A stretch of DNA of 64,000 bases from Paragordius varius (GCA_964247055.1 OZ176055.1:7812001-7876000); one strand, 5' to 3'. Positions 1-43,934 are shown, counted from the first letter of the stretch. Notes: generated from the letters alone by a model not told the origin. Translations and numbers: made by a program.

Positions 1-3000
1 ATCTCTTCGTGATGGCGATTGACATTTTTGTTAGGGATTGAATATTTGTCCCCTGAAGACATTTGTTCCGAATCAGATTTTTCGAAATTCGGTTCACGTG
101 TTAGGCTTTTGAGAAAACTTTTGCTTTTATCTGATTCGGTACATGCTAAAAGTAGATTTTGTTTGGAGCTTGTCAACTGAAATACGAAATATTACATATA
201 TGAGTTATAAATTATTAAGAATAATTAGACTAAATTAGAAAACAAAATATTACATTCTTAAAAAAATGTTCAATTTTATAGAAAGGTTTCCGTTGTTTCT
301 TTTTCCTTGCTTCCAAAATACTCATTTTAAGTTCCTCATTTTCTTTGCTTAATAATTCAACTTCCAAATTTAAGGCATCCAGTTTATCTTGGAGCAACAC
401 TTGACAATCTTTAAGCTTGGCCTTGTTCTATATCAAAATGAATATTATACAATAACAATACCTCGTACTAGCATAAAGTATAAAGAATGCATTTTGATTT
501 TCTTATTGTCCTTGTGCAAGGCTAAAAATAAATCCCATTAAATTATTCATCGAATGGGGATTGACTTTTAAACTAACTGTATAATTAATTACCAGGATCA
601 GGATATTTTCCATGTCATTACGATAAACCATGCGTTCACATTCTAACGTTTGCAACATTTGTTGTTTATCTTGAGCATGTAAGTCACTCGCTTCCAATAG
701 TTGACGTTTCAAATTTTTAATTGTTTCATGATGCTGAATCACGGCTTTTTTGAGCTCTGCCCGTTCCAAGTTCCAAGATTCTTCGATTTTAGCCTTTCTA
801 TCGCGCCATTTCATACGTTCAACCGCATTCGACCGTTGAGACAGAGCAATTTCCTCCCGGTAGCCCTGTAGTTTGCTCTCCATCTAAAGGGAAAATGCAA
901 ATTACAGCTGGATTTTTTTAAATAATAATAAATTTATATACGGATCTCTGCTGAAATTTATAATACGATCCCACAAAAATTATATTAATCTTGTATTATA
1001 TGATAAGTTATTTTTAAGTTTTTTAAAAGTGTGTTCAGATACACTGAGGGGGAGTTTTTAATACAAAATTCGCGGGTGTAACACCGTATAAAAAAATAAA
1101 CCTATAAATGTGTCAACAAATGGATTTTTTTGATGAGCAAATATTTCATGTTAATGATGTATTCAGAACTTAATTGAGGGTCTAGTCTAGTAAGACAAAT
1201 ATTATAAACTAATAAGGGCCAATCTTTAATATATTGCCTGTATTGCTTAAAATTATTGGGTATTTAGTAATGAGGGAACATAAATATTACAACACCAATT
1301 TGAAAATCGTTTTTATAAAAATCCTATTTACAATAAATTTATAATTTATAAATGACAGGCATTTGATATATTATGTATTTTATCACCATCATATAAATAT
1401 AATGACAGCAAACTTGTGAAATAATTGATTTTAAGCGTTCGATTTCGCTCATTAGCTTAGTTCTGTTTTCATCAGTGATCACTTTTTCTTGAGCATTAGT
1501 GGCACGGAGTTCCATAGTAAGTTTTTCAAATTCTTGGCATTTTTGCCGATATTTAGCTGTAAGGGTTTGTTGATGAATCAATTGTTTTTGATACTCACTT
1601 GTATCTTTGCCTAAGGACGCTTCAGATAAATGTATGTTTGATAAAATTGGATAACTTTTCCATTTTGATTGTAAGATGTTTTGTTCCATGATGGAATTGT
1701 CATTGATCTGTTTATTGTTTTTAAAGATAACAGTTCTTAAATGTTTGTTTAACGTTTCTCTCTCGTGTCTTAAATGGTTATTATCAGTTTCTAAATCTTC
1801 TATTTTTGAATACAATTCTTTGATTTCGGTAAACGCTAAATTTCTCTGATTGCTCCACTCCTCTTGATCCTTTTTGTGCTCTTTAGTCATCCGTTCGAAT
1901 TTGCTTTGTGCAGATTTCAATAGTATTGATATCTAATGCAGAGACAATATTTATATAATTAAAATATATTTAACGCATTTTTTGAAAATTTTTATAACAT
2001 AAAATAATTTTACTTGATTAATTTTGCTGAAGAGATCGGTGGCTTGGTTACGATACTCTGTACATGAGGATTTTAGGTTACAAATCTCGTCTTGTAACCG
2101 TTCTTGGACTTCATTGAGATGCGCTTCTCGAATCTTCATATTTTCCTCAAGTTTGGCCTATATTTTTCAAACATTTAAGTTTTTTGCCTTCTAGGCGCAT
2201 GTTTGTATAAATCGCATTGTATCATAAATGAATTGTATAAATTTCTAATTAAACAGTTTTTCTGTATCCACCTCAAAATTTTATGGAAAGTCTTTTGTAT
2301 TCAAGTTTTTAATTAGCGTCACTATTTTTGCGAAGGTAAGGCGTTAGATTCTTACTCTACTTCACCATGTACCACCTCCGATTTGACACTATACTCTTTC
2401 GCAAAATGTTTTTAAATTAAGTTTGGACGCAAACGTACGTTTATTATGAAATTATTATCTCCAAATTTAGCATACAGTCAAAATTATGCAGAGTTGATCC
2501 TTTTTTAGTTTTTTAGCTCTTTTTGTAAGTAAGACCTTTGTAATTTTTAAGCAAACTCTAATTTATAACTACAAATTAAACTTCAACTGTTTTTAAAATT
2601 TTTTATATAAGTTATATAATATTTATTTGACATATTAAAAAACGTTTTGAAAAAATTATACTGCAAAATCGGGGCACAATCGTTTTTTTAAATATTTATA
2701 TAAAATATTGCCACATCATCATAAATATTTTAATCAAAACTTAGAAAATATTAATAAAAAAAACAAAATTTGCTTTGTCACGATTTTTTCGCACTAATTT
2801 TTATACAAATGTCGGCCAACAATAGTTTACGAAATATATATATATATATATATATTTAAAATTTATTTTTTAACATTTTTTATGTGAATCCCCGTGTTCC
2901 GCACCACAAAGGTTCGACTGACTGCTGAAAATATTAATCGCGCAATCGTGTCTTTTTGCATAATTATGAGAATGAGATTATATTAACAAGTTTTCGCTGT

Positions 3001-6000
3001 TAAATTGGAAGCCCATTTAAACACCATCCGATAAAAATAAGCATTTAGATTCTAAACTATTTTTACTGTAAACTATCAAAATTTGTCCTAAATATTTTAG
3101 GACATTCAAATTATTTTATATTATGTGAGCCAAATTTGTAATCTTTTATTATTTTAATTTTTTAATCTAGTATCCCAAAATAAATTATCTACACCTAATA
3201 ATAAAATAATTTATGCTTCTCTTTTAAAATTATATGCGTCATGAATAAGAAATTAAGATATTGAAATACTTTAGTGTTACTCCATTCTGACTCTTGATCG
3301 GATAGTTTGCGGGCTAATTGTTCATTCATAACTTTTAAATCTTTAAGATATTTTTCCAAATTGTCCCGCTCTGATATTATGTCTTCAACTTGTTTTTTGA
3401 TTTTTTTCAATGACTCCAACTAATTGCAACAAATATATTTAATTTAAAGATCATGATATAATAATGAAATTTCGCTAAAACAAAAATTATAAAATCACCA
3501 TACTTCAATATAAGACTAGAAAAGAAACGGCAAAAAAATGTTAACCTCTGCGAATGATCATCTTTTAACTGGCTTCCCAATCAAAAGCAACATTTTTTCA
3601 AGCAAACGCAACGTTTCAAGCAACGACTGAAAAAATATTGCGTTTGCTTGAAAAAAATGTTGCGTTTGCTTGAATATAGAATGCGTTTTCTTGATAAAAT
3701 GTTTTTCTCTTTGAAAAAATGTTGCTTTTCTTGAAAAATTGTTGCGTTTGGTTAAAAAATGTTGCGTTTGCTTGAAAATGTGTTCCTTTTGACTGAAAAA
3801 TGGTATATATATCTTTGGCAAAATATCCTAAAGCTTAGTTTTTTGCATGTTTCACATGGAATGGAAAATATATAAAAATGATTTTCACATTAAATAAAAT
3901 ATTAAGTAATAGGTATTTTAAAATACAGATCGATTTAGTATTATTTCACATTTGATTAATTGGATCGACATAAAGTTATTTTATTTAATAACCATTATAT
4001 TATCAAATATATAACATATTTGCGGTATTCCAAATATGGGAAAATGGGTCTAATTTTTTTGCTAGAAAAACTAAAGGCACCATACTAAAGTGTGAACTAA
4101 ATGAAATATGGATAGTGTCGTATTGTTTTTTTAAGCAAATCTTAAAATTCTGTTATAATATACCTCTTTTAGGCTATCATCATGTTGGTTTTGTAAAGAT
4201 TGATATTTTGTCTGAATTTGACAATATTCATTTTTAACACTTTGCAATTGTTTCTCCGTTTGGAATAGCTTATAAATTAACTCATGATTCTAGCACAAAA
4301 ATATATATTAAAAAAATGGGGACGACGCTTTTGGTTTTGGGTCCTAAGCAAAAAAGGCGGTTAAAATGATGCTTTGTGGGGAAAATGTTTGTGGTTTCAG
4401 CTCCATATATAATTTTATATATTTAAATTTTGATTAGAAAGCTCATAAAAGCGGTTAGAACATAAACAATTAATAAAATTTAATATTTGTGAATTTATTT
4501 TTTAAATTTAATAATAGTATATAAACAGTTTTCACAATAAAGTTGTTGAAAGTTAAAAAAAACTTTAAGCTGGTTTGGGTTCCAGTTTCCAAGTAAAAAT
4601 TAAAATTTAAAAACTAACTTTTCTGCCAGCCAAAGTTGGATCAAGGCTTTCGTCCGAACTCAAAGAGCTTGCACTATTGCTATTTGCTTGGGACAAAGGA
4701 AATTCACATTTATTACTATTATTAGCAGTAAGTTTGCCATTAATGGTATTTATTAATTTTTCAGCAACACTTAGAGTAGTACTCCGTGGTTTATCTCTAC
4801 TTTCATTGGTTAATTCTCTAATTTCCGGTCGTTTTTTAAAGCTTACACTTTTGTTGACATAATCTTTTGATTTTACCATATCAGAATCAGATATATTATC
4901 CTTGTTATTTGCATAATTGGGGTTAGTATTATCATATTCGATATTATTCAGCATTGAGTTTTCCCAATCATTACAACCATTCATTGCTGATACCTCTTTA
5001 GCGTTCCCATTTAATTTAGATTTTTGGTGCCTGCTGTTTTTACCATATCCGTTCAATGTTTTAATCACCGGTTCTCCCCCTTGTCCAATGTTAGACAAGT
5101 GATTTTGCAAGCTTTCATTTTCGTTTTCTAGTTCCAGGATTCGACTTCTTAGAAGCATTTCTTTTTGTTGGCATTCGTAAAGTGTTCGATCAATTTCGTG
5201 TTCGGCAGTTTTAATTTTTTCTAACAAAACCTCTTGCGAATTGTTTTTGTCGGTTAAAGGGCTTGTTGTAACCATCGTAATTTTATTATCAATATTGTTG
5301 ATATCGGAATCTAAAAATGTTAGAAAAATATTTTATATTTAGTTTGCATATATGATGTTTGTTTTTAACCAAGGGATACCTCGTTATACTTTTTAGATGT
5401 ATTCCCGTGCCTCTGATAATTTAAACAAATGCATTGCGTAAATTTTGGCTTAAACTTCATTAATTAAAAAATTTATAGTTTGTATGGCTCAAATAGAATT
5501 TATTTCATAATATTATTACCTTAAATTATTAGGTGTGTTGATAAATTTAATATGCCATATTTCAGCAAAACCTCAAAAAAGTATTTTATAATTTAATATA
5601 TATGTAACTACATTGGGTCATTAACTAATACGTGCCTAAGAAATACACAAAAAATAAGTTAAATCTTATTTCATATTTTAAAAAAATACTGATGATCATC
5701 CAGGTTTTCATTTTAGTTTTTTGCATTTATTTCTTTTATTTGGCTTTTAATTCCCATTTTTCTCTGATTCTGACATCCATTATTTAAAAAATCTCACAAA
5801 CATACAAACGGTACCCAAAATTTGACAACAAAAAAATATTCAAATTAATTTAGAAGTTTAGATTAAGAACCGAAAAGATTATACATAAGGACAAAAATGC
5901 ATAGACTACACCATTTACAATTCAAATTCACCCTTGAACAATTCAAATTTACTCTAAAATTTAATCAAGTGTTTTCGGGCTAATATAACTTATCTTTAAA

Positions 6001-8215
6001 ATGAAATATATTTTTACTACATATTTTATTTTTTTCAGCATTATATTAATTTTAAACAGAATGTCATATTTTGAAATATTAAAAAAATAAAGGAAATTTT
6101 TAATCTTAAAGGGTGAATTTGAATTGTTCAATGGTGAATTTGAACTGTAATTGGTATATTTTATTAATTTCTCTCCTTACTAAACTTTGGATCTATAAAA
6201 CCTTTTAATCTGATTCGAAAAAACAAATCCCCTTTAAATACAATTTATAACATATTTATTAAAGTTACTGCTTTTACAATATAATTGAATAACTTGGATG
6301 GATGTCCTTTATTTTGGGAAGATTAAAACTAACATATAAAATGTCAAAATACCTGATAAAAATGTTTTATTGCCTTGATTATCGATCGATTCAAGAGGTG
6401 TATTTTTAGAAATATTTACGCTTTCCGTGTTTATAAGCGTTGACGTTTCTGATAAAAAATTGGATAATTGATAATTGTTTTCAGTTTCATGCCCAATAAA
6501 ATTATTATTTATATTTGAGAGTTCTTCGTTCTGTAATTTTTTTTCGATATCTTCATTATCCGTAGATATGTAGGAGTCAGTTAAAAATGAATTAACCCGA
6601 TTGGAATTTAAAATTTTATAAGATAGGACTGGATTTTGTGTTTGATAATTGATATTTGTTTGTGAAGGGTGGGCCTTATATGAAACTGAATAAATCGGCG
6701 GTGTAATATCATTTGTTAATGAAGAATCGGAAATTAAATTATCATTATTTTTATAAATATATAGATTATCATGCCTAAGTGTTTTAACTTGCAAAATTGG
6801 TTTTCGATTACCATTATCTTTTGCTACATGGATGATGGATTCAATTTCATAACGAGGAGAATTGGTGGTTAACGCATCCACAATATAATCGTTTTCGCAT
6901 ACATCTGATTTCGCTTTCGTATTTTTATAAACGAAATTGTAAAAATATCCACTATTATTTTGTTTAATTTCACTAGCAGTATTTGTGTTTAGATTTTTAC
7001 TACATTGATTTAAATTGCTCGTTTCATCTTTTTTAATCCCTTGGAAGGAAAAACTGCTATTGTTGGTTTGAGAAGGGAGAAGATGTACATTGATTATTTT
7101 TTCATTAACTTCAATATTATTATGCTTATCCTTATTATTGTTGTGGTTTTTAGTATAATAATGTAATTCTTTAGATTTATTAATGATATTTTTATCACCG
7201 CTCCAGTTATCATTGGTATCGTTATCTGAAAACTCTGAGCTTGTTACAGAATCGGTTAATTGCGCTATTTTTCTGCAATTTTTGATAGTTTTTTCGCTTT
7301 CACTATCCGAGTCTGCAGAGGAATCCTGGTTATTTGTGTGCTCTTTTTTAGTTTCTTTATTTGGAAAATCTTTTGATAATATATTTTTCGGATCAACTAT
7401 ATTATCGCTAATCGTATTTTCACATAACGATGTAATTGATTTTTTTCTATCAAAATTATCTGTGTTGTTGAGGCCTGTTGGGATTTTCATTTGAAATACA
7501 AATTTTTTGATTGAATCCTGTTTTTTTATTTTTCCAACATCATTATTTCTCACCGTTTTAGTTAATAAATCATCAAATTTTTTGTTTTCTACTTGGCTAG
7601 CTGTTGGTGTTACCTTCAAAATATTATATAATATAAGTAAAAAAATATTTGATAAATTTCTAATTTAAAATTCTTTCTTGCACATCTAAGTAATTATATA
7701 TTTATTCATATATAAAGGTGAAATAATTTTTATGTTTCGTTTTCTTATGTGTGAAAAGTATCAATTTGATTGATTATCCGTTTTTTAAGTTAAAACTTAA
7801 CAACTGCGATTTTCCTTGGTATAATACAGACTTATATCCACTTTTTGTAAAATAACAATAAAAGCGGTAAATTAAAAATTAAAGTAACTCATCAATTGAA
7901 AAATATTGTGCTTATAATATGATCCATTATTTTTGTATATAAATATTTATTGTTAGAGACACGAAATATGAATATTGGGTTAAAAAATGTGACAACGATT
8001 ATTTGTATTTTTTTGTATTAACCGCATCATTATATTTGGACAAAAAATCAATAATTTGTTAAATCATTTAAAAAATTTAATTTATATCATTTCAAATGAG
8101 TTACCTCGATTTCGTTTGAAAGTTTAGAATAAATATTGGTTGGTCTGGAGAAATCTGATTGTTTTTCAATTGTTTGGGGGTCTTTGGGAATGTAATCATT
8201 GCCTGACTCATCCAT
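1..8215 (-). CDS. Large multi-exon protein: low-complexity N/S/K-rich N-terminal half plus long coiled coil; 3' end lies beyond the window edge
   Basis: Putative ATG at 8215 (MDESGNDY..., exon 8105-8215) splices in phase 0 to the 6309-7619 ORF. ORFs 4607-5275, 3195-3419, 1951-2139, 1339-1920, 503-883 and exons near 250-427 and 1-177 are co-oriented, have GT-AG-compatible ends, and the later ones are E/K/L/Q heptad-rich. Family not recognised; several internal junctions unresolved. Confidence 0.7.
2834..2855. repeat. (AT)n microsatellite
   Basis: Perfect AT dinucleotide run in an intron. Confidence 0.95.
3582..3800. repeat. About 21-bp minisatellite (AAAAAATGTTGCGTTTGCTTG-like) with an inverted copy at its left end
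   Basis: Direct degenerate copies at about 3627-3790; inverted units (CAAAAGCAACATTTTTTCAAGCAAACGCAAC) at 3582-3620. Confidence 0.8.
5909..6156. mobile_element. MITE family B (21-bp subterminal unit AATTCAAATTCACCCTTGAAC)
   Basis: Starts TA|CACCATTTACAATTCAAATTCACCC, ends GGTGAATTTGAACTGTAATTGGTA|TA; internal sequence shared with copies at 28.2, 50.0 and 62.3 kb. Confidence 0.85.
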
Positions 8216-10430: not shown

Positions 10431-10907
10431 TTTTAAAAATATTGATTACAAAATTTAGAATTTAACATAGATATTTTTGCGTTTTTCACAATACCAGCTC
10501 ATATTAAACGAATCCAAAAATTTGAGATCACTTTAGGGGCTAACATCTTGAAATTATGTTTTAGATAAATATTGCTTGCTTTGATTTAGTTTGTATTATA
10601 TTTAGTGATATTTTTTGTGATGAGCATTAATTTTTCACCAAATTATATTTTTCGTCGTTTTCTGATGTGCTCGAATTTTTGATTTCGCACAATAGTGTAA
10701 TAATAAAATGCAGTATTTCTTTTTTATGTATTTTATCGTATTTATTTTTGGATTAAGTTTTCGCCAATAAAATTTTGTTAAACATAATGAGGGCAGATAT
10801 TGCCATTTTACAACAAAAGTGGAATAATTTTACTTTATCACTGGTAAGAGGACAAACCAAAAGCTTTATTATAATCCTGATATGTGATCCTATCAAAACA
10901 TATATAT

Positions 10908-13900
10908 CACTAGTCAACAAGGTTTTGCACCACCCCATTATTTTTGTGTTTTCAGATACCTAATATCATGGAAAGGCCAAAACAAAAAAAAATTTGAGGC
11001 CACCAATAGGAATTTTCCAAAATTTAATTTTCAAATTTGTATTTAATTTAAAAAAAACAATCATTCCTCGTGTACATATGTTTAAATATTCAAACGAGCA
11101 AGTCGATACAAGTAATATTCTAGAGCCAGGTATTTTCATTATAATTTTAGTACGAAAATGCAAAAATGATCCAAATAAATTTTGCATCTGTTGTGTTAAA
11201 TATAAATTTAAGAAAAATAATTTGCGGAATATTGATGTTATTACTGGAAAACTTTTTACAAAATATTTTGATACCAAAATTGATAATGACAGAGCATGGG
11301 CCCCCCAAAAAATATGCGACGCATGCCGAATCCTTTTGCACGGTTGGAAGAATCATAAAAATATAATGCCATTTTCCGTACCCATGATATGGCGTATCCC
11401 ATCAAATCATGATCAAGGTTCCCATAACATATATTTTAGAGTGCTATTTTTGTCTTTTTGATAATTTCAAAGCTTTTCGAGCAAAGCGATATAAAAAACC
11501 AATTGTTTACCCCGATGTACCTACCGCTATTAAACCAGTACCAAATGATCCAAATATACCAGCCCCAGTATACGATGCCACAGATGATATTTTTATTGAC
11601 GAAGACTCTACAGAAAATGTTATTGATGATCCATTAAATAAAACTTTATCTGAAAATGCCGTTGATCTTTATATTAAAAAATATAAACTGCCTAAAAATG
11701 CTGCTGAAGGGTTATTATCTCTTTTGCATGAGACAAACGTTATATCAAGCGGGAACGTTACTCGACATAGAAATAGACAATCGAAAATTTCTAAATTTTT
11801 TACGGAACTTGATAAAATTATCCACTGCAATGATATAAAAGGATTAATGGAGGAGCTTAATACTTCCTACAATCCTGAAGATTGGGCTCTTTTCGTGGAT
11901 AATATGGTTTTACTCTTATATATAATATTTAAAAGCTGAGTTTGAAGATGATATTACTCCATAAAACTAATGCCAAGAAACCAGTGGTTATTGTATATGG
12001 CCGAAAATGTAAAGAATCTTACCAAGTTTTTAAAGATACACTGGAAAAAATATCTTACAAAACTCATGGTTGGAATGTTGTGGGTGATTTTAAAGTAAAA
12101 TCCGTGATATATTTTAGGTTTTATAAATGCTGGCAGGTCTTCAGGGTGGATTCCCTAAATACCACTGCTTGTTCTGTCTATGGAATAGCAGAATGAGGCA
12201 CCAGCATTATGTAAAGAAGGGCTGGGGTGCTCGAAGTTATCTGATTGGAAATTTCAATCAAATTTTGGAGCCCCTTATAAATATTGAAAAAATATACATC
12301 CCTCCTCTGCATATATTGCTGGGAATTTTTTCAATATTTATAAAGAATCTTGAAAAAGATTCGGAGTCTTTTATTTATTTTCACAACCATTATAATCTCA
12401 GCAAAGCCAAAGCTGAGGCTGGGGTTGCTAATGGCCCATTAATCAAAAAAATTTTTGAAGATAAATCTTTTTTAAACTTATTATCTATAAAAGAAAAAAA
12501 AGGCTTTTGAAGCTTTAAAAAAATTCAACAGTGGTTTTTTAGGTATAATATATTTTTAAATATTAGGTTCACATAAGTCAAAAAATTATAAAATATTCGC
12601 TCAGGAGCTTGTAGAGAGTCATCGGATGGGTATATTATTTCATAAAATGTAGGCTGTAATATGACCATGAAGCTACACGTAATACATGAACATATCGAAA
12701 AATTCCCGCTCAATAACATTAGCGATCAAGTAGGCGAGCGTATGCATCAAGATATAAAAAGATTTGAAGCAAGATACAACGCGCGAAACAATATTAACAT
12801 GATTTCTGATTTTATCTGGAATTTTAATGCCACATAATTATTATTTTAAATATATACAATAAATAAATATTCATTTTATTGAATATATTAATTAAAAATT
12901 TGTAAAGATAATGTATATATTGAGAATAATTTTAATATCTATTTATACAATTTTTTGTGGAAGTACTACAAAGATATACGATTAAATGAATATATAGACT
13001 ATAATCAACACTAAAATTTGTACAAAAAATTATTTGCATGAATAACAAAATTCTAGGCATTAAATAAGATTCTAAACAAGCTAAGAGCCAAAGTATTAAA
13101 AATCTAAAAGGGCTTATTTATAGTGTAATAGATCCGGGCGGCTGCACAAGCTCTGCATATCCCCAAGCGATCCTATAATATGCCACATATGGCAAAGATA
13201 ACAATAAGTAATCAGCCCGATAAGAGAGACTTGCAAGCAAAATCCAAGCAAATTGACATGTCAAATTAACCAATTCACAGAATAAAGTTTGATAAATTCA
13301 ACAATTAAATCGAAAAAATAGATTAGGTAAATACAAATGGTCCGATTCCATAACAGTAAATTCTACTAAAAGTGGCTACACAACATCCATCTGAAATTCA
13401 AAAATAAAACAACCAATAAATTTAAAAAATACAGTATATCCCCTAGGAACAAATAAAGGATTTTTTGTAAAAATCAACTCAAAAGTAAAGCCTAATAACT
13501 ACTCGAAAGAACGAAAATAACAAAAAAAATATAGCCTATCTAAAAGCCGAAGGTTTAAACCATGGAATGCCTTTTTTAGTATTTTTTTAAAAAATTTTTA
13601 TACGTATTAAAAATTCACTTGAAGGAAAAAGGCGGAATTTTGGCGTTTAAGTCCGTACTATTTTTTTCTCTCTGATATTTAAATGACATATTTATATTCA
13701 AAAGATAGAGTTTAAAACGCTTTATTAAATGATATTAAGTTTATAATATAATAACATTTTATTATAAAGTTATTTTTGATTTTCTCTCGATTTTCTCTTG
13801 TTTTTGAAAAATTGAAAAACCTATAATATTTCAAAATTCTGATTGGCGGGATCAAAAATTTTTTCAGATTCGGTTTGAGAACACTGAAATCAGTCATAAT

Positions 13901-13951
13901 TTAAAATTTTGAGTGGTGGTGCTCAAAAATGTCCAAATTTGTCGACTAGTG
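10908..13951 (+). mobile_element. Full-length CMC-superfamily (Chapaev3-like) DNA transposon, 3044 bp
   Basis: Termini CACTAGTCAACAA / TTGTCGACTAGTG (12 of 13 match), patchy subterminal inverted similarity over about 130 bp, TAT on both flanks (10905-10907 and 13952-13954) as a 3-bp TSD; contains a transposase. Confidence 0.9.
11078..12837 (+). pseudogene. Chapaev3-like DDE transposase: 7 exons, about 538 codons after splicing, one nonsense codon and one +1 frameshift
   Basis: Motifs CKNDPNKFCICC, WAPQKICDAC, MPFSVPMIWRIPSNHDQECYFC, WALFVD..SLK.ILLH, WNVVGDFK, GLQGGFPKYHCLFCLWNSR, PPLHILLG, GCNMTMKLH, SDQVGERMHQDI match what I recall of this family. Introns 11130-11150, 11418-11439, 11907-11935, 12095-12117, 12543-12566, 12630-12652. 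Lesions: TAA 12124-12126 and one extra A in the run at 12494-12501. Confidence 0.9.
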
Positions 13952-14019
13952 TATTTTATCAGAATATTTTTCAAAACCCCCCGATTCCGGTCTCAATATT
14001 TAAATACTTTATCCCGCGC

Positions 14020-14190
14020 AATACAATCAGCCCTATGACTATATTGCTTCCAATGATAACAAAACGGAGATTAGACTACTTTGGCTTACACCCGCAACAA
14101 CAAATTGGGAAAAAACTCATGCTGGGCCTGATTGAAGGTAAAGGTAGGCAGAAACAGAAAATGGTCAAAACAATCAACAGATGACACCCA
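14020..14190 (+). mobile_element. RTE-clade LINE 3' remnant
   Basis: Translation MITKRRLDYFGLH...KKLMLGLIEGKGRQKQK resembles the RTE C-terminal RRLxYFGH...LMLGKIEGKRxRGRQR pattern. Confidence 0.7.
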
Positions 14191-15269: not shown

Positions 15270-18200
15270 ATGGGTGTTGATAATACAAAAAAATACGGTG
15301 GTAATAATCATAATTCAATACTTGCGCATGATTATTTATCTACTTCGCGAACCTGTGACATAAAATCATTTTTGAATTCAGATAGATGTGATGAAAGCGA
15401 CAAAAAATTAGTAAAGTTTTCTGATCTATCACTATCAAAGTTAACATATGATAGTCTCCAAGCTTGTGGATTCGAATATTTAACTCCGATACAGAAACTT
15501 GCCATACCTCTTGGTCGTTTTGGCTTGGATTTGATTGTACAATCAAAAGCTGGAACTGGGAAAACATGCGTGTTTGGAACTATTGCCTTAGAAACTATTA
15601 CTTATGAATGCAAATTACCTCAGGTTAGTTGTTAAAATTTAATTTTATTAATTATTATGTATCATTTAAATTATTTCTAATTATAGGTTCTAATACTAGT
15701 ACCAACTAAGGAAATTGCTTTCCAGATTAAATTGTCTCTAATGCGCTTGGGTCAATGCTATAAATCGCAAGGATTTAAAGTTGCGGCCTTTGTTGGAGGC
15801 TATCCCTTACCTTCTGAAAAACCTCAACCTTCTCTTTCAATCCCTTTAAACGAATTTTTTCTCAAAAATTCTACTGGTTCAACATCCGATATTATTGAAT
15901 ATGAATCATCTGAAAATAGTAGGCGAAAAGCGTCTCAAGACAAAATAAACCAAAAATTGGCTGAATTATATAACAGTCATATACTAATTGGGACACCAGG
16001 TAAAAGATATATGCACAATTAAATATTTTTCACCCTATTAATAATTTCATTAAATCTTTTGAGTAATATTTTAAAGAATTTCTAATGTTTTTTTTGGATA
16101 TCAACCATTGAATCATAATAGGTCGAATCAAACATCTCATATACCTCAAATATATTGACGTATCTAACATAAGTCTTCTTGTTATGGACGAAGTGGATCA
16201 AATTTTTAGGGTAAATAATTTTAATTCTGTTATTGTATTTTTTTGCCGGAATAAGTTTTGCGATGAATCAATATAAAAATTCTAATTTTTGTTTGCAATT
16301 ATTATGAAATACTTGAATAGTGTCACTTTTATATATCTCATTTTTAAGGTCAATGAGCAGGAGGTTATGGTTAATTGGATTTTTTCTACGCTTCCACCTG
16401 AACGTCAAATTATAACGACATCAGCTACTTATTCGTCTAGTCTTATACGTTTACTTAGTGATGAATACATGAATTCCCCCCAGATTTGTCAAATCTCATC
16501 TTCATTGCAAACAAATGCAAATCAAATCGCACTTGTTGATAATATGATGGCGAATGAAAACAGCCCAAAAACACTAAAAAATAATGATATAGATGACAAC
16601 ATTGAGGACAATTTTGATGACGAGATGACAGATTTGCCTGATGCCATATCTAACGTTCAATTACACGGTGTTCGACAATATATAGTGGATTTTTCAGATT
16701 CCCAATACTTGCACCATACAATTCATGCCAATTTAAACAGTGGCAAAAATGATAGCCCTCATCTTCAAGAAATTAACCATAATAAGCGTGTATCTTTTGA
16801 ACAAAAGTTAACCTATATTTGCGCTCTCCTGCAACATATAGCCTTTAAACAATGTTTTATATTCGTTAACCATGCTTTTAAACTCGAAGCCGTGGGCCAA
16901 AAACTTAAGAGTTATTTTGCAGCTCAAAATTACAGTAGTATTGAGAAGGATGGTGATACAAATGAAAATTACAAAAAACAACCTTTAATAATTAATGCAA
17001 GATGCTTATGTTCTCAACAGGTAAAAAGTTTTTTTTTTATAAATTTACTCCAAAAAAATTATTAAAATTGATAATCAGAGAGTAAAATAAAGTTTTAATA
17101 AATAGGGAGAGCAAATAAAATTTTAAATCGATAAAAATTTGATCCATAATTTTTATGTACATTTTTAACTTTTTAGGCCTTAATAAATTTAATAATCAAA
17201 TAATTTTAATTTAATCCATTTCTCCATTAATGCCTTATCGTTTATCAAGTTAGTTTTGTGATAAAGAATCATTTTCAAAGTATAACAAGGTTATAATACC
17301 ATAGTATATGTTTATTTTAATTCTAATTCCTTCTTACATCCCTTGATATTTTATTTAAATGTTTTTCTTTCATCTATTTAGCCCATACAAAAGCGTTTAG
17401 CAACTTTGAGAGATTTTGTATCTGGGAAATTTAAGGTTCTGATTTGCACAGATTTAGCGGCCCGTGGAATTGATATTCGATCAGCTGATTTGGTTATTAA
17501 TTTAGATGTTCCACTCCACCCTGATAAATATGTGCATCGTATAGGACGGTGTGGAAGGTATCATTGGAATTATATCGAGATTGTGGTTAAACATTTATTT
17601 TGATTTCGTTTCGTTTAATTTACTGTATTTTTAGTTTAATTTTTTCTTGCATAACTAAGTCCCGACGATGCCTTTGCTATATTCGGAGATTATAAATAAT
17701 TTATTTTTATTCCTTATTCACAACGTGTTTTGAATCTTAAGTTAAAATTCTATTGAAGAAATGTATTAGCATTTGAAAATATATTTTTTAACGTAAATTG
17801 TGGAAAGTACATTCAATTTTTTTATACTTTGGCAATTTAAAAAGACAATTTTTCAAAGTCAAACACTTTTGTATCCTTTAATTTATATAACTTAGTTATT
17901 AAATATCAAGTTGTAGATTTCTTAACCCTATATTAAATAATTTTAATCATAAAGGCAATATACAATATTAAGAATCTTAAACTAATGTATGCAAAAAATG
18001 ATAGACTTTAACTTTTTGAGTTGCGGCGACGCTTTTAAATAGTTAGAGAATAAATATTTTTTAAATATTTGATTTTAATTTCACTTACTGTTTTACACAA
18101 TTATTATTAAAAGTTTATATATGATAATCTTATAACCTAAATTTAATGTAAAATAAATGTAAATGATAAGGTTGAGTCGAAGAGATCGGTTATTAAATTA

Positions 18201-43100: not shown

Positions 43101-43934
43101 TCAAATGATATAAAATACATGGCTTCATATCTAAAACTTTTAATTTACGAAATTTAGAGTTTAATGTTAAATCGGGGCCAAAAATTATCGATAAACTCTA
43201 ATATATAAAAATTCTTCCATGCTAGACCAATTTTCTTTTCAGATATACTAATTATGTACTTTAATGAAATAAATTTTAAATTTACAAGAATGGCAGTTAA
43301 AAAAAGTTAAAATTTGTTGTCTAATGTAATTGAACTAAAAAAATAAAAGACATTATTTTTCAGTATATGCTATTAAAAATTTAAAAAATTATGTAAAAAG
43401 TTGGCTGTAAAATTGTATTTCCGAATATATAAATAAATAGTCGCACCTTTTTTATAATATTGGTAGCAAGCATGAGAACGTCCAACTTATCGTGAAAACT
43501 CTGTGCGGCTGCCAAATATGCTATACGCTAATAATTAAAATTAGCAATTATAATTAAATTTAAATTTTAAAAATATGAAATGATTGTGTTACTTTGTGGA
43601 CAAATTTAACTGAGCTCATAACTTCTATGATGTTGAAGGCGGCCCAGTGTACATTATATCCAATCATATTCAGCTAAAAATTTAATTTATCTTATACGTA
43701 AATAAGTTTCGCAATTGCCATTGCTTTTACAGTCATATTGTCTTGTCTTAATTCATTTTTGATCTCATCCAAACATTGTGTTATAAATTTGGACTAATTT
43801 TTAAAATAATCATTAAATTAAACTTCATTTTCCTTATTATTTCGAATACCGCGTATCATATCACTAAGATTCTTCTCAAAAAGCTTGTCAATATTATCTT
43901 TGACTCGTTTAATAATAATATTTTCGGGATTCAT
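20260..43934 (-). CDS. AP3D1: AP-3 complex subunit delta-1, more than 20 exons
   Basis: ATG at 43934 (MNPENIIIKRVKDNIDKLFEKNLSDMIRGIRNNKENE), then SKFITQCLDEIKNELRQD, WAAFNIIEVMSS, RIAYLAAAQSF, LARDL, TKPYVRKRA, GVQSAAVNVICE, TNNWMLIKIIKL, EPRLGKKL, STSAMSLLYEC, QKLRILIED, KYLGLLAM, YRDDLIRNII...DFEWY, ICGEYS, NNPHYLK, all collinear with AP3D1. Last exons (20496-20549, 20260-20368) are less certain. Confidence 0.95.
22985..23019. repeat. (AT)n microsatellite
   Basis: Perfect run in an AP3D1 intron. Confidence 0.95.
24857..25186. repeat. Cluster of three microsatellites: (AT)n, (TA)n and compound (TA)n(TG)n
   Basis: Runs at 24857-24888, 24948-24973 and 25141-25186 within one intron. Confidence 0.95.
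26713..27207. mobile_element. MITE family D, 495 bp
   Basis: TA|CCTTTTGGGGTAG..TATATCCCGGAGC and GCTCTGGGATATA..TACCCCAAAAGG|TA are imperfect inverted repeats; an inverted second copy lies at about 58525-58880. Confidence 0.65.
28174..28498. mobile_element. MITE family B
   Basis: About four left and three right 21-bp units; right end CTGTAAATGGTG|TA; left terminus eroded. Confidence 0.85.
29990..31190. repeat. About 114-bp tandem array with a 342-bp three-monomer higher-order repeat
   Basis: The variant GTAAAAATTTCGG recurs at 30221, 30563 and 30905 (period 342) with two other fixed variants in between. Confidence 0.9.
31420..32467 (-). mobile_element. Non-autonomous Helitron, 1048 bp
   Basis: On the - strand: A|TCTATATATTTATAAAAATGG start, a 10-bp GC-rich hairpin (31428-31450), then CTAG|T end, no TSD. 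Absent from the opposite foldback arm. Two internal direct repeats at about 31624-31945 and 32076-32435. Confidence 0.88.
34802..38484. mobile_element. Foldback element 2, 3683 bp, TA-flanked
   Basis: TA|CAGTATGCATTTTAATG ... CATTAAAATGCATACTG|TA; arms about 34802-36550 and 36690-38484 around a spacer of about 140 bp; the same 114-bp monomers; inner arms differ from element 1. Confidence 0.9.

What the first reader, a model, noticed from the sequence alone, without database searches (positions are those of the whole stretch)
11078..12837. DNA transposase split by six 21-29 nt micro-introns
Seen: the Chapaev3-like transposase appears as four broken ORFs, but removing six GT..AG segments of 21, 22, 29, 23, 24 and 23 nt joins conserved motifs at the junctions (NHDQ|ECYFC, GFL|GSHKS, RM|GCNM, GDFK|V). 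Four have lengths not divisible by 3 and the 24-nt one holds an in-frame stop, so splicing is required; the 21-nt first intron is in frame and rests on pattern only. The spliced length is 1617 nt after correcting one extra A. The DDE residues (FVD, GDF, GER), TIRs and TSD are intact and only two lesions remain. Inference: the element gained host-style micro-introns while functional, since I recall relatives having these motifs uninterrupted. This could mean long residence in this lineage, licensing of transposase expression by the host spliceosome (a barrier to horizontal transfer), or evasion of surveillance of unspliced RNA. The neighbouring hAT transposase needs no introns.
Basis: partly seen in the sequence, partly recalled or inferred. 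Interest (0 to 1): 0.88.

Follow-up and report, generated by a model that had tools for sequence, protein, structure and literature searches.

The report
Jumping gene split by tiny introns
A cut-and-paste transposon (Chapaev3 type) in this very AT-rich animal genome has its transposase gene interrupted by six GT..AG segments of only 21-29 bases that look like the host's own tiny introns and are absent from its relatives, which suggests the element gained introns; no RNA could be examined to show the cutting.

Summary
Removing six GT..AG segments (21, 22, 29, 23, 24 and 23 nt) from 11078-12837 gives a 538-codon reading. It aligns end to end with full-length Chapaev3-type transposases (37% identity, E 1.5e-122) and keeps 55 of 57 near-invariant residues.

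- **Junctions:** Five are fixed by homology. The first, in-frame one rests on pattern only.
- **Chance:** GT..AG at five junctions has a probability of 1.6e-6 or less.
- **Element:** It spans 10908-13951, with CAC..GTG inverted ends and a 3-bp TAT duplication.
- **Copy number:** Roughly 5-13 coding copies exist, and hundreds or more internally deleted derivatives.
- **Other copies:** Diverged contigs keep segments 2, 4 and 5.
- **Host control:** The AP3D1 gene in the same window has obligatory 24- and 30-nt introns, so the "host-style" label is justified.
- **Relatives:** Two genomic relatives have uninterrupted genes, and the nearest contig reads straight through junctions 3-6. The literature says most Chapaev3 transposases are single-exon.

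This copy is dead: it has a TAA stop, a frameshift in an A-run, and lacks a 3-nt AGC that some other copies have.

Missing: any RNA evidence of splicing. The functional ideas (transfer barrier, evasion of surveillance) are untested.

First-reader notes of this scan describe the same thing on other DNA of this genome (other Chapaev copies, Tc1 elements). I rate it a new variant of a known kind.

The parts
10905..10907 (.). left target-site duplication TAT, preceded by A
   Evidence: a single-copy contig of run X1 ends exactly at 10907
10908..13951 (+). whole Chapaev3-type element, 3044 bp
   Evidence: ends found by eye and checked; depth jumps from about 600 to 2e5-1e6 inside these bounds
10908..10920 (+). 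5' terminal inverted repeat CACTAGTCAACAA
   Evidence: matches the reverse complement of 13939-13951 at 12 of 13; similar to the Mythimna relative's CACTACTCTACAA
13939..13951 (+). 3' terminal inverted repeat TTGTCGACTAGTG
13952..13954 (.). right target-site duplication TAT, followed by T
   Evidence: a flank contig of X1 starts matching at 13952
11078..11129 (+). exon 1 (start ATG at 11078)
11130..11150 (+). intron 1, 21 nt, GT..AG, phase 1; in frame, no stop; rests on pattern only
   Evidence: the CCAG|GT donor is kept in diverged copies (loose-end consensus at 11133); N-terminus not conserved
11151..11417 (+). exon 2 (N-terminal Cys-rich domain, ...PMIWRIPSNHDQ)
11418..11439 (+). intron 2, 22 nt, phase 1, obligatory
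   Evidence: diverged contigs span it with 0 or a few gap letters (X1 record 4 and X6 record 19: 0; X5 record 10: 6)
11440..11906 (+). exon 3, ends with first catalytic Asp (FVD; GAT at 11898-11900); lacks the AGC that some other copies have after 11900
   Evidence: AGC insertion in 2 X1 contigs
11907..11935 (+). intron 3, 29 nt, phase 0, obligatory
11936..12094 (+). exon 4, ends with second catalytic Asp (GDFK; GAT at 12086-12088)
12095..12117 (+). intron 4, 23 nt, phase 0, obligatory
   Evidence: spanned by contigs X1 record 5, X6 record 20 and X7 record 28
12118..12542 (+). exon 5 (C(2)C motif CLFC at 12166-12177, LH at 12307-12312); carries both disabling lesions
12124..12126 (+). lesion: in-frame TAA at a position where all relatives have a residue
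12494..12501 (+). lesion: run of eight A with a +1 frameshift
12543..12566 (+). intron 5, 24 nt, phase 1, holds an in-frame TAA, obligatory
   Evidence: spanned by X5 record 12
12567..12629 (+). exon 6
12630..12652 (+). intron 6, 23 nt, phase 1, obligatory
   Evidence: spanned by X1 record 7 and X6 record 23
12653..12837 (+). exon 7 (H(4)H motif HVIHEH at 12676-12693; catalytic Glu of GER, GAG at 12736-12738; stop TAA at 12835-12837)
12838..13938 (+). 3' non-coding part of the element; from about 13080 it is the high-copy part kept in deletion derivatives
   Evidence: depth profile and deletion joints
43794..43823 (-). host control: 30-nt GT..AG micro-intron of AP3D1
   Evidence: flanking pieces map to residues 12-32 and 33/34-64 of chain 9c58_D
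43674..43697 (-). host control: 24-nt GT..AG micro-intron of AP3D1
   Evidence: flanking pieces map to residues 34-64 and 65-91 of chain 9c58_D

Best explanation
This is one slightly decayed copy of a recently active, multi-copy Chapaev3-type (CMC superfamily) cut-and-paste DNA transposon, 3044 bp long.

Its transposase gene is built of seven exons separated by spliceosomal GT-AG micro-introns of 21-29 nt. These are of the same class as the host's own tiny introns. A working transposase can therefore be made only after the host spliceosome removes at least five of them. If any of introns 2-6 is retained, the protein is truncated.

The introns are additions to a gene that is uninterrupted in its relatives. 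They arose before the copies in this genome diverged.

Shown: the anatomy, colinearity with relatives, improbability by chance, presence of segments 2, 4 and 5 in diverged copies, host introns of the same kind, and absence from relatives.

Inferred: that the segments are removed from RNA, and that they were gained in this host lineage.
For: - **Segments and spliced reading:**
- **Homology:** end-to-end match to P0018, 37% identity, E 1.5e-122.
- **Colinearity:** shown at junctions 2-6 against 18 full-length relatives and 154-222 of 269 relatives.
- **Conserved residues:** 55 of 57 near-invariant residues are kept across all exons, including D260, D313, C332 and C335 of C(2)C, and LH.
- **Chance:** 1.6e-6 or less for five junctions. 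Intron GC is 18% against 33% in the exons.
- **Ends of the element:** TIR, TSD and exact contig breakpoints at 10907/10908 and 13951/13952.
- **Copy number:** coding part at about 5-13 times single-copy depth, termini at hundreds to more than a thousand times, with many internal-deletion joints.
- **Other copies:** contigs 6-10% diverged span introns 2, 4 and 5 with 0-3 gap letters. A near-identical contig from another run (1 other letter, 3 gaps) spans intron 6.
- **Frame check at junction 3:** some other copies have an extra AGC after 11900. This restores the family's spacing at junction 3 and so supports the frame read across it.
- **Host control:** AP3D1 micro-introns of 24 and 30 nt are exactly colinear with human AP3D1.
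- **Relatives without interruptions:**
- **Literature:** Chapaev3 hallmarks, and mostly single-exon genes (PMC4079192).
Against: - There is no RNA evidence. The five runs marked 'RNA?' of the same species label hold none of the sampled words, and no read could be laid on them.
- This copy is a pseudogene. I could not fetch any intact copy, so current activity and splicing of the family are inferred.
- Intron 1 is untestable.
- The nearest relative is only 37-42% identical, so when and where the introns arose is open.
- The TSD is TAT rather than TWA.
- Only part of the joints and indels was shown. Intron-less DNA copies could therefore exist unseen.
Confidence: 0.75

Rival explanations
1. The introns are real but were not gained in this host lineage. 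They were already in the element when it arrived, by descent or by transfer from another organism with tiny introns. Alternatively, they began as ordinary-sized introns that shrank under the same pressures as the host's introns.
For: The nearest relatives found are only 37-42% identical, which leaves a long unsampled branch. Two Chapaev3 families are described with one intron. Earlier notes of this scan, untested here, say that some host micro-introns sit where a related worm has longer introns.
Against: All relatives examined read straight through positions 2-6. The Merrow intron, after about residue 78, does not coincide with intron 2 by my approximate numbering. The size class matches this host.
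Confidence: 0.2
2. The segments are not introns but insertions that accumulated in a dead gene. They were then copied along with it when other elements' transposase mobilised it, and the GT..AG ends are coincidence.
For: This copy is broken. No RNA evidence exists. Deletion junctions in this family carry AT-rich filler of 3-28 nt, so short AT-rich insertions do arise here.
Against: All six have GT..AG, with probability 1.6e-6 or less for five. All fall in the narrow 21-29 nt band of host micro-introns. The exons keep 55 of 57 near-invariant residues, which is hard to square with a gene that took six or more disabling insertions.
Confidence: 0.04
3. The segments are removed at the DNA level (programmed elimination, as with ciliate internal eliminated sequences) rather than from RNA.
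For: They are similar in size to the shortest ciliate eliminated sequences (my own knowledge). Nothing here supports it directly.
Against: The ends are GT..AG, not TA..TA. DNA contigs keep the segments, and none of the 15 joints shown (107 more were not shown) skips them. The genome is an animal's: AP3D1 and a DEAD-box helicase also have ordinary introns of 62-65 nt.
Confidence: 0.01

Closest known systems
Chapaev3 group of the CMC (CACTA-Mirage-Chapaev) superfamily, e.g. Garfield and Merrow (PMC4079192)
   Same: 5'-CAC..GTG-3' inverted ends; 3-bp duplication inserted between A and T; transposase of about 540-560 aa with DDE plus the C(2)C, LH and H(4)H motifs; element of 2.3-3 kb; internally deleted non-autonomous derivatives.
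   Different: Six interruptions instead of none (most Chapaev3) or one (Merrow, Garfield). The duplication is TAT, not TWA. Identity to the nearest relatives found is only 37-42%.
DNA transposons whose transposase needs splicing (P element, Ac, En/Spm and other plant CACTA elements, Tol2)
   Same: The host spliceosome must process the transposase mRNA. Plant CACTA transposases of the same superfamily have many exons (PMC4158355, title and abstract; the rest is my own knowledge).
   Different: Those introns are of ordinary size and mostly old within their families. Here they are 21-29 nt and absent from the element's animal relatives.
Host micro-introns of this genome
   Same: GT..AG ends, 24-30 nt, very AT-rich, 3' ends such as TTTTAG or ATTAG, obligatory for the frame.
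   Different: They lie in single-copy housekeeping genes. According to earlier untested notes, some are at ancestral intron positions, whereas those in the transposase have no counterpart in relatives.
Introners (transposon-derived introns; PMC9860276, PMC12130899)
   Same: A burst of new introns in one lineage.
   Different: Introners are repeated elements of tens to hundreds of bases or more, with recognisable copies. These six segments share no similarity beyond AT-rich ends and show no significant similarity to their flanks.

Membership tests
Chapaev3 / CMC DNA transposon | terminal inverted repeats ending 5'-CAC ... GTG-3' | tested here: met
   CACTAGTCAACAA at 10908-10920 against TTGTCGACTAGTG at 13939-13951, 12 of 13 matching; criterion from PMC4079192
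Chapaev3 / CMC DNA transposon | 3-bp target-site duplication, consensus TWA, inserted between A and T | tested here: inconclusive
   A 3-bp duplication TAT on both sides, flanked by A and T. Length and flanking bases fit; the third base departs from TWA.
Chapaev3 / CMC DNA transposon | DDE transposase with C(2)C, LH and H(4)H motifs | tested here: met
   FVD, GDFK, GER; CLFC; PPLH; HVIHEH. D260, D313, C332, C335 and L379-H380 fall in near-invariant columns.
Chapaev3 / CMC DNA transposon | sequence homology to named Chapaev3 transposases | tested here: inconclusive
   Strong homology to a large unnamed animal family. One member is a 556-aa Mythimna protein in a 2.25-kb element with CAC..GTG ends and a TAA duplication, which fits the description of Garfield. 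No Repbase reference sequence could be compared, and Pfam has no model that hits.
Spliceosomal (U2-type GT-AG) intron | GT at the 5' end and AG at the 3' end | tested here: met
   six of six
Spliceosomal (U2-type GT-AG) intron | removal restores a reading colinear with uninterrupted homologues | tested here: met
   junctions 2-6; junction 1 cannot be tested
Spliceosomal (U2-type GT-AG) intron | the segment is absent from mature RNA | not testable with these tools
   Runs marked 'RNA?' hold none of the locus's words. Reads were laid on four runs of unrecorded kind ('?') whose contigs keep the segments.
Spliceosomal (U2-type GT-AG) intron | the same organism splices introns of this size | tested here: inconclusive
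By homology, AP3D1 in this window needs 24- and 30-nt GT..AG segments removed. RNA proof was not obtained here.
Introner-like element | the introns are copies of one repeated sequence | tested here: not met
   no similarity among the six beyond AT-rich ends, and none to the flanks
Domesticated transposase (host gene) | single copy, no transposon ends, intact frame | tested here: not met
   TIRs and TSD present, multi-copy, broken frame

The most novel reading that the evidence does not exclude
This animal lineage makes new micro-introns at a high rate, even inside mobile elements. On this reading, six introns were inserted de novo into a transposase gene whose relatives have none.

One possible route is short AT-rich filler laid down during double-strand-break repair. 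Such filler, 3-28 nt long, is seen at this family's deletion junctions.

Transposon families of known relative age could then be used to date and count intron births in an animal. Retained micro-introns could also yield truncated DNA-binding proteins that hold the element in check, much as the P element's retained intron does.
Probability: 0.3. Interest if true: 0.8.

Novelty: new variant of a known kind. Interest (0 to 1): 0.6.

Why it matters
Intron gain is thought to be very rare in animals, and its mechanisms are disputed. A transposase whose relatives are uninterrupted gives a clean ancestral state of zero. Six host-style introns in 1.6 kb would therefore be a dense and datable record of intron birth, in a genome that also has an unusual class of introns under 30 nt.

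There is also a practical point. ORF-based and standard gene finders will call such elements dead or miss them. Counts of intact and active transposons in this genome are therefore likely to be too low.

It would also mean that the element's expression depends on a spliceosome able to handle tiny introns. That could restrict where the element works, though this is untested.

Tried and rejected
- **Pfam:** scanning five exon translations gave no significant family. There seems to be no model for this transposase.
- **Automatic repeat search:** the inverted-repeat search and my 14-mer scan missed the short TIRs. I found them by reading and then confirmed them (and the contig breakpoints).
- **RNA evidence:** both run searches listed only five small runs marked 'RNA?' holding none of the words. 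Reads were laid on four runs of unrecorded kind and showed no intron-sized joint among the rows shown, but 107 joints and 86 indels were not shown.
- **Organism:** a search with a 121-aa DEAD-box fragment returned nothing because of the length limits. The 'hairworm relative' label comes only from earlier notes, and literature searches on hairworm genomes and introns found nothing useful.
- **Origin by tandem duplication of exon sequence:** there is no significant similarity between any intron and its flanks.
- **Same intron as Merrow/Garfield:** their exon 1 of about 78 aa ends roughly 17-18 residues before the CYFC motif, whereas intron 2 lies directly before it. The numbering is approximate, so I reject this only tentatively.
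- **Close copies in the protein collections:** none above about 52% identity, so paralogues could not be fetched for a test of exon against intron divergence.
not located.

Full report
**1. Observation**

The window has 26% GC. In 11078-12837 the plus strand holds four larger ORF pieces in different frames.

| Intron | Coordinates | Length (nt) |
|---|---|---|
| 1 | 11130-11150 | 21 |
| 2 | 11418-11439 | 22 |
| 3 | 11907-11935 | 29 |
| 4 | 12095-12117 | 23 |
| 5 | 12543-12566 | 24 |
| 6 | 12630-12652 | 23 |

All begin with GT and end with AG. Removing them leaves 1618 nt. That reads as one frame except for an in-frame TAA at 12124-12126 and a +1 shift in the A-run at 12494-12501.

Read through with X at these two breaks, the 539-residue model aligns from residue 19 to 537 with P0018 (560 aa) at 37% identity and E 1.5e-122. 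It is colinear with 18 full-length relatives at junctions 2-6, with at most one residue of gap.

Among 269 relatives fetched, 154-222 span each of these junctions in a single alignment. Nearly all do so with at most one gap column: 153/154, 179/181, 218/222, 182/191 and 170/172. The model keeps 55 of 57 columns that are near-invariant in the family. These include both catalytic Asp residues, the C(2)C cysteines and the LH motif.

If retained, each of segments 2-6 shifts the frame or brings a stop. Intron 1 is in frame, has no stop and lies in an unconserved N-terminus.

**2. More than chance?**

In this window only 0.16% of all 21-29-nt segments are GT..AG. Allowing a generous 45 boundary choices per junction, the chance that five junctions all offer such a segment is about 1.6e-6.

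Other GT..AG choices with the same frame effect exist near each junction (3-9 candidate segments per junction, the proposed one included). They are 33-68 nt long and would remove conserved residues.

The segments have 18% GC against 33% in the exons. Intron phases are 1, 1, 0, 0, 1, 1, read from the codons at the junctions.

**3. What the element is**

The element runs from 10908 to 13951. It has 13-nt inverted ends, CACTAGTCAACAA and TTGTCGACTAGTG, matching at 12 of 13. It also has a shared subterminal GCACCACC and a TAT duplication on both sides, flanked by A and T.

Contigs of run X1 at single-copy depth stop or start exactly at 10907 and 13952.

PMC4079192 gives these hallmarks of Chapaev and Chapaev3:
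- CAC..GTG termini;
- a 3-bp TWA duplication inserted between A and T;
- the C(2)C, LH and H(4)H motifs;
- elements of about 2.3 kb encoding about 556 aa.

All are met here except the third base of the duplication.

A relative on a Mythimna loreyi chromosome (P0179, 556 aa) lies in a 2.25-kb element with CACTACTCTACAA ends and a TAA duplication. Pfam has no model that hits. No Repbase reference was available, so the family name rests on these features.

**4. Copy number and activity**

In run X1 the flanks have a word depth of about 550-800. The coding part has 3,000-7,800 over most of its length. The termini (10848-11219 and 13080-13947) have 2e5-1e6.

That suggests roughly 5-13 coding copies and hundreds or more internally deleted derivatives. 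The tool warns that summed contig depth is not a copy number.

Many joints show such deletions, for example 11120 to 13038 and 11732 to 12853. They often carry 3-28 nt of AT-rich filler.

Contigs that differ from the window by 6-10% span introns 2, 4 and 5 with 0-3 gap letters. Near-identical contigs span introns 2, 4 and 6 in runs labelled as other organisms. The segments are therefore older than the divergence of the copies.

About a third of the depth at 11900 carries an extra AGC. This gives FVD-S-NM|LSLK, the spacing that the family shows at junction 3. It independently supports the frame read across that junction, and it means this copy has a third difference from its kin.

**5. Host-style?**

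On the minus strand of the same window, the AP3D1 gene needs two segments removed: 43794-43823 (30 nt) and 43674-43697 (24 nt). Both are GT..AG.

The three flanking pieces map to residues 12-32, 33/34-64 and 65-91 of human AP3D1 chain 9c58_D, with no residue missing. Their ends (GTTTAA...AATTAG and GTATAA...TTTTAG) resemble those in the transposase.

The same gene and a DEAD-box helicase gene also have ordinary introns of about 62-65 nt.

Earlier notes of this scan report many such host micro-introns, and in one case RNA support. I did not test those.

**6. Gain or inheritance?**

- P0179 (Mythimna chromosome) and P0207 (2.66-Mb contig) are encoded by uninterrupted stretches of exactly 3 x (length + 1) nt. 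So is P0018, on a 2.5-kb contig.
- The nearest contig, L003 (42% identity over the main 284-residue alignment, 39% GC), is itself decayed by frameshifts but reads straight through positions 3-6.
- PMC4079192 says most Chapaev3 transposases are single-exon, and that Merrow and Garfield have two exons with an exon 1 of about 78 aa. By my approximate numbering this lies 17-18 residues before intron 2.

Gain is therefore the simpler reading. With 37-42% identity to the nearest kin, however, the branch is long, and the host in which the gains happened is inferred only from the size class.

I found no sign of origin by tandem duplication of exon sequence, or from a repeated element.

**7. What is missing**

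- There is no RNA evidence.
- I could not fetch other copies as sequence, so there is no test of exon against intron divergence and no proof that an intact copy exists.
- The organism was not identified here. 'Hairworm relative' comes only from earlier notes.
- The proposed consequences (barrier to transfer, evasion of surveillance) remain ideas. One paper found in passing links introns to resistance against small-RNA silencing in C. elegans (PMC5554785, title and abstract only).

**8. Verdict**

Best explanation: real spliceosomal micro-introns in a Chapaev3 transposase, added relative to uninterrupted relatives, in a recently active family of which this copy is a dead member.

Introns in DNA-transposase genes are well known, and two Chapaev3 families have one. 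What is new is the number, the size, and the match to an unusual host intron class.

First-reader notes of this scan describe the same feature on other copies of this family and on Tc1 elements of this genome. The phenomenon therefore seems genome-wide, and this locus is one more instance.

Noticed in passing
window 43593-43886, minus strand: The host AP3D1 gene has obligatory micro-introns of 30 nt (43794-43823) and 24 nt (43674-43697), exactly colinear with the human protein. An ordinary intron of about 65 nt follows.
   Followed up: yes
window 10908-11219 and 13080-13951: The termini of the element reach depths hundreds to more than a thousand times the single-copy level. Many internal-deletion joints carry 3-28 nt of AT-rich filler, which points to a large family of non-autonomous derivatives.
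   Followed up: partly
window 11411-11607, 12015-12152, 12176-12353, 12601-12748: Runs labelled as other organisms (X6, X7) hold contigs with 0-2 differences from this copy, introns included, while lacking the left flank. This could be the same species under another label, contamination or recent transfer; the names are coded.
   Followed up: no
window 15270-15760: A DEAD-box helicase gene (Q motif and motif I) has an ordinary intron of about 62 nt after ...KLPQ, so micro and ordinary introns coexist within a few kilobases.
   Followed up: partly
L003:1-1550: The nearest relative found (a Logan contig, 39% GC) is itself a decayed copy with two frameshifts but no inserted segments.
   Followed up: partly
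window 13984-14184 and 10600-10889: Run X5, labelled organism B, covers both flanks of this insertion at single-copy depth (the right flank with no differences). Organism B is therefore the same species or a very close one.
   Followed up: no
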